Shown here piece by piece: positions 2,348 through 22,273 of a stretch of 64,000 nucleotides of DNA. Below the pieces are notes generated by a model. That model did not search any database, was not told the origin of the DNA, and saw nothing but the letters and a program-made list of their open reading frames with translations. The translations under genes were made by a program, and so were the position numbers. The stretch lies in the NCBI GenBank assembly GCA_977016875.1, contig CDRNST010000273.1, positions 1,178,001 to 1,242,000 on the forward strand, given 5' to 3'. The stretch is from Pavona decussata (lineage: Eukaryota). Within the stretch, counting starts at the first letter, position 1, and each line of letters begins with the position of its first letter.

Positions 2348-5119
2348 AAGGTCGCTATTTAGACGCTCTAAGAGTAGGAAATTATCCAAACTTGCGGATT
2401 TGATGAAAGTTGGCTCTTGCACCTGTGTTCTCTTACAAAATAATAATTCTGCCGAGCCCGCATACTAATTATACTGAAGTATTTTTAATAGTTTTTCCAG
2501 ACAGGTTGTTCACCTATTAACAGACCTGGGCGACAGGTTGTTCGAAAACCGTTAAAAGTTTCTTCAATGCTCGATTAAACCTCCACATCGCGGTCATTTT
2601 GTCATTCATATCTCTGTGTACTTACCATCATATTGCCATATTTGCCACTTGGCAATTATCGAAATTGAAAAAAAACTACTGAATTTATCGACACTAAAGA
2701 GTCAAGTTTTGAATCATGCAATGTGGTATTAACCGTTTCAGTTAGAGCAAATGTCTAAGTGTGGCAGTTCAAATGAAAGCTCTGGAGCAAATAATTTCCG
2801 ATGGTATTCTCTAAATGCAATGTATTTCACATAAAACTTTTCAATGCTGTACTCAACCGTACGCTTTCGAGCGGTCTATAACAGAAGGTAGTAAAGATAC
2901 CGGCTATGGCGTCAAAGATGGTTTTAAGCCCTGCTTACTCTACTCACAGTGTTAGTGGTCACATACAGCGACTGACGAAGACGTCTAAAGGAAACAGCTT
3001 TTAGAAATCAGTGGAAACTTTATAAAACTGCTTCGTTTTCAGAGTGGGCGCGTCAGTTTTGGAAACACTAAGAATATCGTCTCGAAAATCCCTTTGTGAT
3101 TGGACAGGTGAAAACGAAGACGCTTAAAAGACGCTGACGCCAATATTGATAGATGAGGAGTAGACGATAAGCATAACGCAAAACTCATAAAACATAATAC
3201 GTTTTCAAACCAACATGTATTATTGTGGACAGGTGAAATGGGCGACTTCTAATTCCCATATCTAAATCTTTGAGTGTTATTGCATGATACTGGCTCGTGA
3301 ATCCTGGTCTCGAAATGTAAAATACAAATCCGCTAATACTTGTGGTGCATGGAAAAAATTCAACTACTTCGCATAGCGGGCTGTCGTCGACTTACAAAAA
3401 CGCGTCCTTTTTGCCACCTTTAAAAGTCAAACCGGACAAAAAATATATTTTTTTCCCATCAAACTTTGCAAATGACTTAGTCGCTCGGTTCAGCTGCCGG
3501 AATGTTTTAACCTGGGCTGATATGAACTTTCTCCAACCAGACTAGCTCATTCGATCATAAATGAAGAATTGGATTATAGGAATCAATCTTTAAACTGCTG
3601 ATGGTCTGAGTTCGTCGCCATATCGTTGACTCCCAAGTTAAACCTGGCGTGTTGGCCGCCTGTATCCAAAATGGGACTTTATGTTCAGAACGGTTCGCTA
3701 ATAACTTTCGAAAACACAGTGTAAATCAAGCTTTCAATGAAAATAACACATGTGATTTTGTTAAGCGAATAGCAGATATTAAGACGCTTTATAACCACAA
3801 AAAACTTCCTCATGTCTTCTGATGAACATACATCGAGACAAAAGCGTGAATGACTTAGAAAGGCAATTTGTTTTGACAGGTCCTAGATGTACATGTCGAC
3901 CCAATATATGCGACTCATTATACGTTCGCAATTTAATTTCTTATGGAAAATACTTTTATAAAGTCCCAGTCACCCAAATTTATTACCTAGAGCCTTCGTT
4001 TCACTGTCCCCTTTTGAACGAACGCGTATAGTGTAATCCAATAACTACAAACAGGGTTAATTCGTTGGATATTAATAAAGTTCTTAAGTGTGCCGCGGTT
4101 AGTCAATTTTGTTAGATTAATAGTTAAGCTTTTTTTACGCAAATGTAGTACATGTTCGGTATATTAATATTGATTAATTCGCATTCGTATTAATCGCGCA
4201 CACAGTGATCTAGCCAAACGACTCGACTCGCCTCTAACTCGCATAATCGCATATCAGAAAACGACGCGTTATACTATCCTACACATACACGAAAACCACG
4301 TGCTTTACTTGTCAATCAAAGTCATAAGATAAAATGTCAATCATTAATTACTGTCCCGACGTACGATCCAACAAAACAGTAGCAATAAATGTTTCACGAC
4401 ACTTTATTTCACAGACAATGAATTTAACAGCTATTTTAAAACTTTTTTTTTTTTTTAGTTTTGACAGTCTATTGTTTAGTTCATGCCCTTGCAACGACGC
4501 ACGATCTTGGCGGAAAATACAACACTACACTTGCTGCCTTAAGGATACCAATAGAAAAACTTTGTTGCCCTGAAGGACACATCGTCTACAATTTACGAAC
4601 AAGTTGCCTAACACCTTTGCATTTCCAAAGCATAGGCTCTCCGTCTCAATAACGGACATAATAGTAACTTGACATCTACACAGACCAAAATTAATTTCTT
4701 CTCAGCGTGAAAACATTTAGTGCGATGCACGTCCAATGGTGTCTTAGACAAACCAGCGCGGTAGGATGCGTCAATGAAGCCTATTACAATTATTTTGTTG
4801 ATGAGGCTTAAAATAGCCAAACGAGACCTGCTTTGGTGATCTATCGCCAGCAAAAATAACAGCATCATCGTAACCAGCCAAAAGTCGTCCAATCTGAATT
4901 CATTCCAGTTTAGAAATCCGAATAAAGCCTCAGAGAACTATGGTGCACTGTGATGCGATTCTGTAAAATTATGATCTTTAAAATAGTTTAGAGGGTCAAT
5001 CACAAGTTCAATGACAGAAAGCAATTAAGTACCACCCTCCACAAATAATACCTTTATCCCCATAATCCTAAAATTTGAACATTCAATTGAAACCTTGATC
5101 GAGCAGTGCTACTATCAGC

Positions 5120-5150
<31 letters not shown>

Positions 5151-6439
5151 CTTTTTTTTTTTTTTGGTGCAAACTTTTGGGCGCACAGTGGGATTAAGAC
5201 TGAGTTCATTTATTGAAGGGCTGAGTTGAAATCTCTTGTAGGTCGTGGATGCTAATTTGGTTGGTGTCCTAAGCGGTCAAGCGAAAACAATTACTTGTTC
5301 ATAGTGAGATCTGTGACAGGTAAGCGTGCCACAAAACACCGTGGGGTAACAAGACGCAAATAATACATTAAATGAAAGATAAAAAAATGACGCGTCTCTT
5401 AAAACAGCAATCGAACAAATATAGAAACACGTTGCTTTTTGTCAGTCTGTGGTTCGTTAGTTCTTTAGCTTTCAAAATTAGGTCGGTTTGAGGCATTAGT
5501 GATAAAATTTTGTCATCACTAAGAAACTAAAAAGCGCTAAGACAAAACAAGAACACGTTTCGGTTTATAGCGCTTTATTCACAAATGACCCCTTACTGTG
5601 GTGAAATCCATGAAAATTAGGGCCTAATTTAGGGGATTTATTCTAAGTGTTTTTTTTGTTGTTAAAGATAAGTTTTTTCTTCGTCATTTTTGTTGAAAGT
5701 CTACCGGATGTGTTAACCAACTTCGTCTCATCGAAAGGCATGATTTGAAGCGGTTCACTTAATAACGCCTAATTAAGTCTATTAAAAGTACTTGGTGGTA
5801 AACATCTACCGAACACAAATGACTTGAATTAGCCATCAGTGTCATTCGCAGCGCACAGCTGCCCAGTTAAGAACTTCGAAAAATGCCTAAAACGTCATAG
5901 TCTAACACGACTAAGTAAATATAATGTCGAGGCTGCAGACACGAACAAGTTTGCTGGGTTAAAATATGCTGGAAATTTCAATAGGATATTTTGACACCGT
6001 TGTCTAAAGTTAAGCATCTCATGTTCTGCATTACATGCCCCGAGGACTCGAAAAGGCAGAATACAAAATTTATTCAAGTGATCCTTGGATAAAAATTATC
6101 CTGCAGTAGTTTGCTATGGAGCAATTTAATCAGTATTGTTTCTCATAAAAGAAAAAATTTGAATTTGTTTTTCTCATTTTAAAACATGGCGGGTTTTGGA
6201 AATAAAACGTCAACGAAGCCTCGAATCAATTAAGATGTCGATCTTCAACCGTTACTTCGAATCTTCAGATGGAATCTCGAAGTATGACCATTCAATTAGA
6301 AGCTCTTTAGTAGCACCTTACGCTGACGTTCTATATATATTTCAAAAGGTTTTTCTTAACAAGTTGTAATCTTTACCGCTGATAGGATCCATCACGACTG
6401 AACCGCCGAATAAACGGACCCCTTAATTATTCGTTATTT

Positions 6440-6690
6440 TGACAATACAGGTGCAATAGACAATAGGTTTTGTTTAGCGCGCGGACTTTCTATTGGCGAA
6501 CAATGCACTTGGCACTTGTTGTTTGGTTTAGTTCAATCGTGAGTTCGTTGGATATACTCCAGCTATTCAGTTTACAATAAAAGCCAGCGCGTGCTCTGGG
6601 AGTTAACAAATCGGTTAGCCGTGCTCGCACGTGTCGCCTGTGGGACCATTTACTTCGCTTCACAATAAAACAGCGAAAGGACAATCAAGT
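6440..6690 (+). promoter_or_regulatory. Candidate proximal promoter of the SNAG-Fez gene with clustered Sox-type ACAAT sites and E-boxes
   Basis: ACAAT at 6442, 6460, 6500, 6574, 6662 and 6681; CAGGTG at 6448; CACGTG at 6628; reverse CCAAT at 6492. Confidence 0.4.
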
Positions 6691-6885
6691 GAAGAAAGAG
6701 TCACAACGTCCCTGTTTTTTTACGGGTCGCTCATCTAGACGCATCGCCGAGCTGTTTTCGTATTTGAGTTTGAAGCAGTTGACAAGTTAGGGCAAATCAA
6801 GTCCCTGCTTTCTTGAGAACACGTTGAGGAAAAACCAACACCCACTATCGAGAAGCGGAATTATAAAAAGCCGAAGGAAGCTAAA

Positions 6886-8497
6886 ATGCCTAAGTCTTTC
6901 CTGCTAAAGAGGCGATCGTTGATTAGCTCTGCTGTTAAGCCAGACCTCCAAGAAAAAGGTTTGTTTAAGTTCAAAAGTTCGTTTTCTAGCGACTTAAAGA
7001 CTAAGCGACTTTGTATCACAGTTACAACTGTATTCCTGTAAGTGCTTACCGTATTTAAAATGCATGTGTTGTAAATTAATCCAGCTTAAACAGGCTTAAC
7101 TTCTTGGTTGTTTTTCTCTTTAAAATTCGTTTTGAACAAACTTTTGCCGGAATGCAACTAAACGGCAGTCTCAAGGCCTTTTAGCAGGTCTCTGTACATT
7201 TTCAAATTAATTGTACACAAGCTTAACGCAACTAACGAATTTTGAATAGTGCTAAAGCAAAACGTTAACAACAAAGAGTTTATAATTTTTACAAAATACT
7301 CAATAGGTTCGTCTTGGCTTATAACACAACGGCAGAAGAAACATACAAAATCTAAATTCATTTTGAAACATTCACACACTAGCTTATTTAATGATTGTCA
7401 TCGAGTTTGTAAGTCTCTGACAAGGTAACTGGCAAATTTTTGACTAACATAAAGAGTGAACTTTGAAAACAAAGCGTTTGTAATTTTTCTAAAATGCTCA
7501 ATAGCCTTGTCTTCATTTACACACAGAAGTCGTTGGGGAAAGAACTAGAACTTCGAAATCCGAAGACGATGCGATGGAACACAGACCGCTATCAGAGCCA
7601 AAACAACTGACTCCCGTATCGCCTCAGATTGACAGTTGGTCAAGCAGTATTTTCGCTGACACTGGAGCGATGCCCTTGAACAAGGAGTTGATGAAGTACA
7701 CAGCCCACAGCCAGCTCCCCAGTTACACTCCTTTTTGCCACTTCGCAGTCCCTGGTGCATCAAACAGCTTCCACCAGAATTCCCATGCAGATTTCAGTAA
7801 CATGCAGACCGGTTTTAGCTATCTGCACGCGGCAAGTTTAAGAAACGAACGCTTTAGTTGGAATCCAAACTTACTAAGCACTCATCAGGCAGCAGTTAAT
7901 TTTGATGTTTGTAAGGGTGAAATCGCATTTGAGACACCACCGAAGGTTATTATTCCCAGTGAAGTTAGGCAGCCTTATCGCTGTGACCAGTGTGGTAAAA
8001 TCTTTAAAACAAAATACACCCTGGCGATTCACCTCAAAATGCCGAATCATACTTTTGCGCGACCTTTTGTTTGCAACACCTGTGGCAAAGGCTTTCGCTT
8101 GTCTTCTACACTGTGCAGGCATAAAATAATTCACACTAAAGAGAAACCGTACAAATGCCACGTTTGCGATAAAGCGTTCAACCGCTCTTCCACCCTGAAA
8201 ACGCATGTACGGACGCACAGCGTTGAGAAAGAATTTGTTTGCGATCGCTGCGGAAAAGGGTTTCACCAAAAGGGCAACTTGCGAAACCATATTCTTATCC
8301 ATACAGGTGAAAAGCCGTACAAGTGTACATTGTGCCAAAAGGCTTTCAACAAATTGTCGAATTTGAAGTTCCATATGCATGTGCACACTGATAATTCGCC
8401 TTATCGGTGCCGAGTTTGTAAGGTCTCGTTTTCACGAAGGTGCGATTTGAAGAGTCATGTGGAGAATGCCCACTCCCAAAAAGAAAGCGAATTCTGA
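6886..8497 (+). CDS. FEZF: SNAG-domain, six C2H2 zinc-finger transcription factor with a Fez/FEZF-type finger array; exons 6886-6958 and 7527-8497 (347 aa)
   Basis: Exon 1 reads [24 protein letters not shown], then a phase-1 GT donor at 6959. The acceptor ...ttacacacag ends at 7526 and restores the frame into ORF 7574-8497. Fingers [39 protein letters not shown] and NLKFHMHVH closely match FEZF1/2 fingers as I recall them ([48 protein letters not shown]). Confidence 0.88.
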
Positions 8498-22143: not shown

Positions 22144-22273
22144 TCCCTGATGATGCCGTTGATCGGCGAAAGCTTAGATTTTAGTTTTTACTTTTAAACA
22201 GCAGTTTAAGGCCTCAATAGAACAGCTTTATATATCCTTAACCATGCTGTTGAAGGGCAAGATGAACAGATTA
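22144..22273 (+). mobile_element. ~130-nt Penelope-like terminal-repeat fragment starting at a minimal hammerhead ribozyme motif
   Basis: TCC-CTGATGA-T-GCCG(TTGAT)CGGC-GAA-AGCT-T-AGATT. CTAA is duplicated on both sides. Near-identical to the arms of 61319-61547. Confidence 0.75.

What the first reader, a model, noticed from the sequence alone, without database searches (positions are those of the whole stretch)
6886..8497. Fez-type zinc fingers joined to a SNAG motif rather than eh1: a Gfi/Fez mosaic hidden in a 73-nt first exon
Seen: a small exon absent from the ORF track encodes [10 protein letters not shown] at the extreme N-terminus and splices in frame to six fingers. I see no eh1-like FSIxxI(L/M) motif in the N-terminal region. 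Known: SNAG (MPRSFLVK; Gfi1, Snail, Scratch, Insm, Ovol) recruits LSD1/CoREST and must be N-terminal. Bilaterian Fezf/Earmuff use eh1-Groucho instead. Fingers 2-5 are clearly Fez-like, not Gfi-like. Inference: either a relic of a common Gfi/Fez ancestor or a lineage-specific corepressor swap that puts LSD1 on Fez-type sites. Annotation starting at Met 7574 would miss this.
Basis: partly seen in the sequence, partly recalled or inferred. Interest (0 to 1): 0.72.

Follow-up and report, generated by a model that had tools for sequence, protein, structure and literature searches.

The report
Coral SNAG-Fezf-like repressor gene, already described
This is a real two-exon coral gene that joins a short N-terminal "SNAG" repressor peptide to six Fez-type zinc fingers, but this is the normal, already published architecture of Fez-family genes in cnidarians, not a new Gfi/Fez hybrid.

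Summary
The ATG at 6886 opens 73 coding bases ([10 protein letters not shown]...) that end at a phase-1 GT donor (6959). Through the AG at 7525-26 they join in frame to the ORF with six C2H2 fingers. There is no eh1 motif.

The same exon, donor and phase occur at six orthologous coral loci and two paralogues. A transcript/genome pair from a relative shows the splice directly. RefSeq models of the orthologues in Porites, Acropora, Montipora, Orbicella and Pocillopora all start with MPK[SA]FLLKR.

The interpretation does not hold as a novelty. This is not a Gfi/Fez mosaic or a lineage-specific swap. The genome has one canonical Gfi, one canonical Fezf and three Fezf-like genes, all with SNAG first exons. 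The window gene is one of the Fezf-like three.

Irimia et al. 2010 (EvoDevo 1:7, PMC2942887) already reported that non-bilaterian Fezf and cnidarian Fezf-like proteins carry SNAG, and that bilaterians have a "Fezf box" instead.

LSD1/CoREST recruitment is inferred, not tested. No RNA data for this species were available. The scan has noted hidden SNAG exons on other pieces of this genome (s1-477466, s1-480535). Interest is low.

The parts
6421..6707 (+). Conserved non-coding block upstream of the coding start. It probably holds the core promoter and the start of the 5' UTR.
   Evidence: blastn gives 75-78% identity over about 290-377 nt to the orthologous genomic loci L029, L031 and L006, and it lies inside one 2,180-nt, 72%-identical match to L030. 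The 5' ends of transcripts L001 and L002 align to 6531-6705 and 6580-6690.
6531..6885 (+). Inferred 5' UTR part of exon 1. The 5' limit is approximate.
   Evidence: Transcript contig L001 is colinear with its own genomic contig L006 from its first base through the SNAG codons. Its first 178 nt align to window 6531-6705.
6886..6958 (+). Coding end of exon 1: Met plus the SNAG motif ([10 protein letters not shown]) and 14 further residues. It ends in phase 1.
   Evidence: The first 10 or so residues are invariant or nearly so in orthologues, while the rest of the exon varies.
6959..7526 (+). Intron of 568 nt, GT...AG, phase 1.
   Evidence: The homologous intron is shown spliced in a relative. 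Phase-1 donors follow the ATG by 73-88 nt in six orthologous loci and two paralogues.
7527..8497 (+). Exon 2 coding part: weakly conserved linker, six fingers, stop at 8495-8497.
7976..8473 (+). Six tandem C2H2 zinc fingers of the Fezf-like type. Finger 1 has an H-x5-H spacing.
   Evidence: Pfam, identities to the paralogues, tree, recognition residues.

Best explanation
The locus is a two-exon gene of a stony coral. It encodes a sequence-specific transcriptional repressor of the cnidarian 'Fezf-like' branch of the Fez zinc-finger family. Exon 1 (a 5' UTR plus 73 coding bases) supplies an N-terminal SNAG motif. Exon 2 supplies a poorly conserved linker and six C2H2 fingers. The base-contacting residues of fingers 2-4 are identical to those of canonical Fezf, so the protein probably recognises a Fezf-like core site. 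By analogy with Gfi1, Snail and Insm1, the free N-terminal Pro-Lys-Ser-Phe-Leu peptide would insert into the LSD1 active site and bring LSD1-CoREST (with HDAC) to those sites. SNAG is the ancestral corepressor motif of the Fez family. It is kept in non-bilaterians, and bilaterians carry the eh1/'Fezf box' instead. Shown here: gene structure, family placement, conservation, and splicing in relatives. Inferred: transcription of the junction in this species, DNA specificity, and LSD1 binding.
For: Splice in a relative: transcript L001 against genomic L006 gives two blocks (1-434 and 433-1529 matching 1803-2236 and 2592-3688). The donor is GAG|GTTTGT, the acceptor CAG|AAG, and the phase is 1, as in the window. 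A second orthologue transcript was seen in three sequencing runs.

All six orthologous genomic loci and paralogues L009 and L010 have MP[KR][SA]FLL[KR]R followed by a phase-1 donor. Nine RefSeq/GenBank orthologue models start with the SNAG motif.

Own genome: canonical Fezf L011 (85-91% finger identity to vertebrate FEZF1/2) with SNAG. Canonical Gfi L012 has its SNAG exon in L028. There are three Fezf-like genes, at 100, 81 and 74% finger identity to the window, against 62% for Fezf and 46% for Gfi.

Tree of 77 finger domains: Gfi | Fez split 100/100, canonical Fezf clade 97/91 without the window gene, Fezf-like clade 99/89 with it. Nesting inside Gfi is rejected (delta lnL 164, p-AU 5e-6).

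Recognition residues of fingers 2-4 are identical to Fezf.

Literature: PMC2942887. An Lsd1-CoREST complex exists in a sea anemone (PMC9400249, PMC8786827).
Against: No RNA evidence from this species. In amphioxus a predicted Fezf SNAG exon was not found in transcripts (PMC2942887), so presence in the genome does not prove use. No cnidarian SNAG-LSD1 interaction has been shown in the papers I read. I could not clearly identify LSD1 in this genome. Fingers 1, 5 and 6 differ from Fezf, so the full binding site may differ. The root of the Fez tree is not resolved.
Confidence: 0.85

Rival explanations
1. One reading: a Gfi/Fez mosaic, or a lineage-specific corepressor swap in which a Fez-type protein of this lineage acquired SNAG in place of eh1.
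For: SNAG plus Fez-type fingers with no eh1 is what the sequence shows. Bilaterian Fezf proteins do carry eh1 and lack SNAG (84 of the 99 Fezf hits without SNAG).
Against: Canonical Fezf of this coral, of Porites, Nematostella, Exaiptasia and of octocorals also starts MPRSFLVK and lacks eh1. All three Fezf-like paralogues have SNAG exons with the same intron phase. There is no Gfi-derived segment: the finger domain is 46% identical to the genome's own Gfi, and only finger 3 comes close in its recognition residues (NSTT against KSTT). The distribution places the change on the bilaterian stem, as published.
Confidence: 0.03
2. The SNAG exon is conserved in the genome but not used in this species. 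The protein would start at Met 7574, as in the public ORF call, or an alternative promoter would give a SNAG-less isoform.
For: No transcript data for this genome. There is an amphioxus precedent of an untranscribed predicted SNAG exon. Several NCBI Gfi models of cnidarians are SNAG-less isoforms. The scan noted a possible SNAG-less alternative first exon at another gene of this genome (s1-477546, unchecked).
Against: [10 protein letters not shown] and the donor are intact and identical in a second assembly (L007). The motif is invariant across corals while the rest of exon 1 drifts, which argues for selection on the peptide. Transcripts of three orthologues include it. The ORF call at Met 7574 comes from a caller that cannot splice.
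Confidence: 0.07
3. On origin: the Fezf-like genes are a cnidarian-only, fast-evolving duplication of canonical Fezf. The alternative is an older paralogue group that predates the cnidarian-bilaterian split.
For: All 38 rows of the Fezf-like clade are cnidarian or unnamed. The AU test does not reject moving the Gfi outgroup onto the window's own subclade (delta lnL 1.17, p 0.44), so the root is open.
Against: With Gfi as outgroup the best tree puts Fezf-like outside a clade of cnidarian plus bilaterian Fezf (97/91). Irimia et al. report a sea-urchin Fezf-like gene with SNAG that branches basally. I had no such sequence in my set.
Confidence: 0.4

Closest known systems
Cnidarian 'Fezf-like' genes (NveFezf3, NveFezf12, NveFezf30 of Nematostella; Irimia et al. 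2010, EvoDevo 1:7). RefSeq coral orthologues are named 'fez family zinc finger protein 1-like/2' (e.g. Acropora digitifera XP_015764245.1, Orbicella faveolata XP_020628428.1, Porites lutea XP_073229708.1).
   Same: N-terminal SNAG, no Fezf box/eh1, six Fez-type fingers without introns, and position outside the canonical Fezf clade. The direct orthologues share the two-exon structure and start MPK[SA]FLLKR.
   Different: Nothing of kind. The linker between SNAG and the fingers evolves fast (55-77% overall identity between corals). The public ORF call for this genome lacks exon 1.
Canonical Fezf (FEZF1/FEZF2, Drosophila Earmuff, cnidarian Fezf)
   Same: Six fingers in the same order. The recognition residues of fingers 2-4 are identical (RSTR, NSTT, HGNN). 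The cnidarian members also carry SNAG.
   Different: 62% finger identity to the genome's own Fezf. Finger 1 has a two-residue longer His spacing. Fingers 1, 5 and 6 differ in contact residues. Bilaterian members have eh1 (LAFSIERIM-type) and no SNAG.
Gfi1/Gfi1b/Senseless
   Same: N-terminal SNAG and six C-terminal C2H2 fingers. Repressor logic is presumably through LSD1-CoREST.
   Different: 46% finger identity. Contact residues differ in every finger, most closely matched in finger 3 (NSTT against KSTT). The two are separated by a 100/100 branch, and nesting is rejected by the AU test. The genome has its own three-exon SNAG-Gfi on contig C18.

Membership tests
Fez zinc-finger family, broad sense (Fezf + Fezf-like) | Six tandem C2H2 fingers at the C-terminus, encoded without introns | tested here: met
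   Pfam finds six zf-C2H2 stretches. They lie in a single exon, 7527-8497.
Fez zinc-finger family, broad sense (Fezf + Fezf-like) | The finger domain groups with Fez proteins and not with Gfi or other ZNFs | tested here: met
   Gfi | Fez split 100/100. Placement inside Gfi is rejected, p-AU 5e-6. Identity is 62-81% to the genome's own Fez-type genes against 46% to its Gfi.
Fez zinc-finger family, broad sense (Fezf + Fezf-like) | Fez-type DNA-contact residues in the central fingers | tested here: met
   Positions -1, 2, 3 and 6 of fingers 2-4 are identical to cnidarian, amphioxus and vertebrate Fezf.
Canonical Fezf (orthologue of FEZF1/2, Earmuff) | Membership of the canonical Fezf clade | tested here: not met
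   The canonical clade (22 rows, cnidarian plus bilaterian, 97/91) excludes the window gene. The genome's canonical Fezf is L011 on contig C204.
Canonical Fezf (orthologue of FEZF1/2, Earmuff) | eh1/'Fezf box' near the N-terminus (bilaterian members) | tested here: not met
   A regex scan of the region before the fingers finds none in the window gene or in any cnidarian Fez-type protein. It is found in 85 of 108 canonical Fezf hits.
Cnidarian Fezf-like group (Irimia et al. 2010) | SNAG present, no Fezf box, branching outside canonical Fezf | tested here: met
   The definition is from PMC2942887. The NveFezf3/12/30 names could not be mapped one-to-one onto my Nematostella rows.
Gfi/Senseless | Gfi-type finger domain | tested here: not met
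SNAG-domain repressors (functional class) | Motif directly after the initiator Met, with Pro2, Phe5 and a basic residue at position 8 | tested here: met
   [10 protein letters not shown] at 6886-6915. The motif is unique in the window and invariant among the orthologues.
SNAG-domain repressors (functional class) | Binding of LSD1/CoREST and SNAG-dependent repression | not testable with these tools
   Inference from Gfi1/Snail (my own knowledge) and from the existence of an Lsd1-CoREST complex in Nematostella (PMC9400249, PMC8786827). No complex prediction was run.

The most novel reading that the evidence does not exclude
Corals keep four SNAG-bearing Fez-type repressors (one Fezf, three Fezf-like) that share identical contact residues in fingers 2-4 but differ in fingers 1, 5 and 6. 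If SNAG here really recruits LSD1-CoREST, cnidarians put LSD1 on Fez-type sites where bilaterians are held to use the eh1 motif and Groucho. That would make the SNAG-to-eh1 change at the bilaterian stem an experimentally testable corepressor switch. None of the Fezf-like genes has been studied functionally in the papers I could search.
Probability: 0.45. Interest if true: 0.35.

Novelty: already known. Interest (0 to 1): 0.15.

Why it matters
It matters little as a discovery. The architecture was published in 2010 and is present in RefSeq models of many corals and sea anemones.

Three practical points follow.
- ORF-style annotation of this assembly truncates the protein and drops its repressor motif. 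The same probably holds for its paralogues and for other SNAG genes in this genome.
- The shared contact residues in fingers 2-4, together with SNAG, give a concrete hypothesis for anyone testing LSD1-dependent repression in cnidarians.

Tried and rejected
- **Joined protein.** The two-exon protein was not built or sent to any tool.
- **PDB sequence search.** Only generic poly-zinc-finger matches (ZNF568, PRDM9, CTCF; Gfi-1 fingers at 1e-23). It does not help to assign the family.
- **LSD1 in the window's own genome.** There are three SWIRM hits. Two were scanned with Pfam and showed SWIRM only. No amine-oxidase hit was listed next to any of the three. This is inconclusive, because exon-by-exon matching and candidate capping can hide LSD1.
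- **Cnidarian Lsd1 and CoREST papers.** They do not mention SNAG partners.
- **AU test holding the window's orthologue clade with Gfi on one side of a branch.** Not rejected (p 0.44). This only means that the attachment point of the very long Gfi branch, the root, is unresolved. The proper test of nesting inside Gfi rejects strongly.
- **Bacterial-type promoter/terminator scan.** Not meaningful for a eukaryote.
- **Rfam gathering scan of the window.** No hits.
- **Complex prediction of SNAG with LSD1.** Not run: the exon-1 peptide has 24 residues (the tool needs 30), the joined protein was not to be used, and no coral LSD1 sequence was in hand.
- **Linker motif.** A conserved 'FSIYSPFYHF' in the orthologues starts like eh1 but has Pro and Phe where eh1 needs Ile and Leu, and it is degenerate in the window ([10 protein letters not shown]). 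I rejected it as an eh1.

Full report
**Observation.** The sequence shows an ATG at 6886 followed by 24 codons, [24 protein letters not shown], and one further G. Then comes AAG|GTTTGT with GT at 6959-6960. At 7525-7526 an AG closes a 568-nt intron and exon 2 starts at 7527. The split codon G+AA gives Glu. The frame then runs through Met 7574 to the stop at 8495-8497. Pfam finds six C2H2 fingers in exon 2. A degenerate DNA pattern for the SNAG start matches the 64-kb window once, at 6886, against 0 expected from shuffles. I did not build or submit the joined two-exon protein. Each exon was handled by reference.

**Is the exon real?** There is no RNA tool for this species, so the test is comparative.

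- The closest public protein (P0001, 99% identical, ENA) starts at the Met that corresponds to 7574.
- Three orthologues taken from short assembled contigs of sequencing runs start [22 protein letters not shown] and [15 protein letters not shown]. One of them was seen in three runs.
- For one of these I found both the transcript contig (L001) and a genomic contig of the same species (L006). blastn splits the transcript into blocks 1-434 and 433-1529, which match 1803-2236 and 2592-3688. That is a 355-nt intron removed between GAG|GTTTGT and CAG|AAG, in phase 1, the same junction type and phase as in the window.
- Six orthologous genomic loci (L007, L029, L030, L031, L032, L006) carry MPKSFLL[KR]RR upstream of the called ORF, followed 73-88 nt later by a phase-1 GT donor. 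The first ten or so residues are fixed and the rest of the exon drifts.
- Cluster look-ups show that the direct orthologues are annotated in RefSeq/GenBank for Porites lutea, three Acropora, two Montipora, Orbicella faveolata and two Pocillopora species. All nine models begin with MPK[SA]FLLKR.

The 5' ends of the transcripts from relatives align to window 6531-6705 and 6580-6690. The first exon is therefore probably about 430 nt long, and only its last 73 nt are coding.

**What family?** Named hits of exon 2 are cnidarian "fez family zinc finger" proteins. A six-frame search of the window's own genome (602 Mb) gives a clear series:

| Locus | Contig | Finger identity to the window |
|---|---|---|
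| window gene | C273 | 100% |
| L009 | C233 | 81% |
| L010 | C143 | 74% |
| L011 | C204 | 62% |
| L012 | C18 | 46% |

Below L012 come ordinary poly-zinc-finger genes.

- L011 is the canonical Fezf. Its fingers are 85-91% identical to vertebrate FEZF1/FEZF2, and the whole protein is 91% identical to a Porites lutea protein.
- L012 is the canonical Gfi.
- Every one of these genes has a SNAG first exon: L009 MPKSFLLRRH, L010 MPRAFLLKRD, L011 MPRSFLVKLK. For Gfi the exon reads MPKSFLVKKRG and lies about 2.2 kb upstream in a three-exon gene.

The genome has a canonical Fezf and a canonical Gfi beside this gene, but the Fezf has SNAG, not eh1.

**Survey of motifs.** Among the 360 proteins retrieved, bilaterian Fezf proteins carry an eh1-type LAFSI[ED]RIM and no SNAG. 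Cnidarian Fezf proteins (Porites, Nematostella, Exaiptasia, Paramuricea, Dendronephthya) carry MPRSFLVK and no eh1. One amphioxus model has both. Proteins without SNAG in the Fezf-like groups are almost all unspliced ORF calls from genomic contigs.

**Tree.** I built a maximum-likelihood tree of 77 six-finger domains (166 columns, LG+C20). The rows were chosen by hand from the three searches plus the five genes of the window's own genome, and vertebrates were thinned to a few.

- It separates Gfi from all Fez-type sequences with 100/100 support.
- It recovers a canonical Fezf clade of cnidarian plus bilaterian sequences (97/91).
- It recovers a Fezf-like clade of 38 rows (99/89) that holds the window gene within a 10-row orthologue clade (98/91).
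- Forcing the window's clade inside Gfi costs 164 log-likelihood units (p-AU 5e-6).
- Forcing it merely next to the Gfi branch is not rejected (p 0.44). The root of the Fez tree, and so the age of the Fezf/Fezf-like duplication, stays open.

The contact residues (-1, 2, 3, 6) of fingers 2-4 are identical in the window gene, its paralogues and all canonical Fezf proteins. Finger 5 shares two of four. Fingers 1 and 6 differ. Gfi differs in every finger and comes closest in finger 3, at three of four.

**Literature.** Irimia et al. 2010 (EvoDevo 1:7, PMC2942887) make three relevant statements:

[quoted passage not shown] Amphioxus keeps a predicted SNAG exon that is not transcribed.
- Bilaterians have a "Fezf box" instead.
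- Cnidarians and sea urchin have extra "Fezf-like" genes with SNAG and without the Fezf box, and these branch basally.

I found no later paper on the function of the Fezf-like genes.

**Mechanism.** Shown: a two-exon gene, an N-terminal SNAG under strong constraint, and Fez-type fingers. Inferred: the protein binds a Fezf-like core site through fingers 2-4 and represses through SNAG. In Gfi1, Snail and Insm1, SNAG binds the LSD1 catalytic cleft and recruits CoREST and HDAC (my own knowledge). An Lsd1-CoREST complex exists and is developmentally required in Nematostella (PMC9400249, PMC8786827). Those papers name no SNAG partners. My attempt to pinpoint LSD1 in this genome was inconclusive.

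**Verdict.** The interpretation as a new mosaic or lineage-specific swap is not supported. SNAG is ancestral for the Fez family, and the window gene is an ordinary coral member of the described Fezf-like group. Novelty: already known. Interest: low.

Noticed in passing
window 6421-6817: A non-coding block upstream of the SNAG ATG is about as conserved between coral species (75-78% over roughly 290-377 nt) as the coding exons. It overlaps the 5' ends of the orthologous transcripts. It is probably a promoter or 5' UTR element of this developmental gene.
   Followed up: partly
window 7452-7532: The last 75 nt or so of the intron before the acceptor are conserved in the orthologous loci (75-83%), more than the rest of the intron. 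This may be a branch-point/polypyrimidine region or a regulatory element.
   Followed up: no
G000:C233 (L009), C143 (L010), C204 (L011), C18 (L012/L028): This coral has one canonical SNAG-Gfi (three exons), one canonical SNAG-Fezf and three SNAG-Fezf-like genes. All Fez-type genes share a phase-1 intron right after the SNAG exon. Public ORF-style protein calls for most such loci lack the SNAG exon.
   Followed up: yes
P0153 (Branchiostoma floridae x japonicum model, 521 aa): This NCBI amphioxus Fezf isoform model carries both an N-terminal SNAG (MPKSFLVKTVKG) and the eh1 motif (FSIARIM). Irimia et al. 2010 did not detect the SNAG exon in amphioxus transcripts, so it is worth checking against current RNA-seq.
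   Followed up: no
window 22144-22273: Another first-stage note places a hammerhead-ribozyme-led 130-nt unit here. An Rfam scan of the whole window at gathering thresholds returned no family at all. I ran no lower-threshold scan.
   Followed up: partly
window 7976-8050 (finger 1): Finger 1 of all Fezf-like proteins has an unusual H-x5-H spacing (IHLKMP[NSD]HT) where canonical Fezf has H-x3-H (RHMPVHT). This two-residue insertion is a handy signature of the Fezf-like clade.
   Followed up: partly
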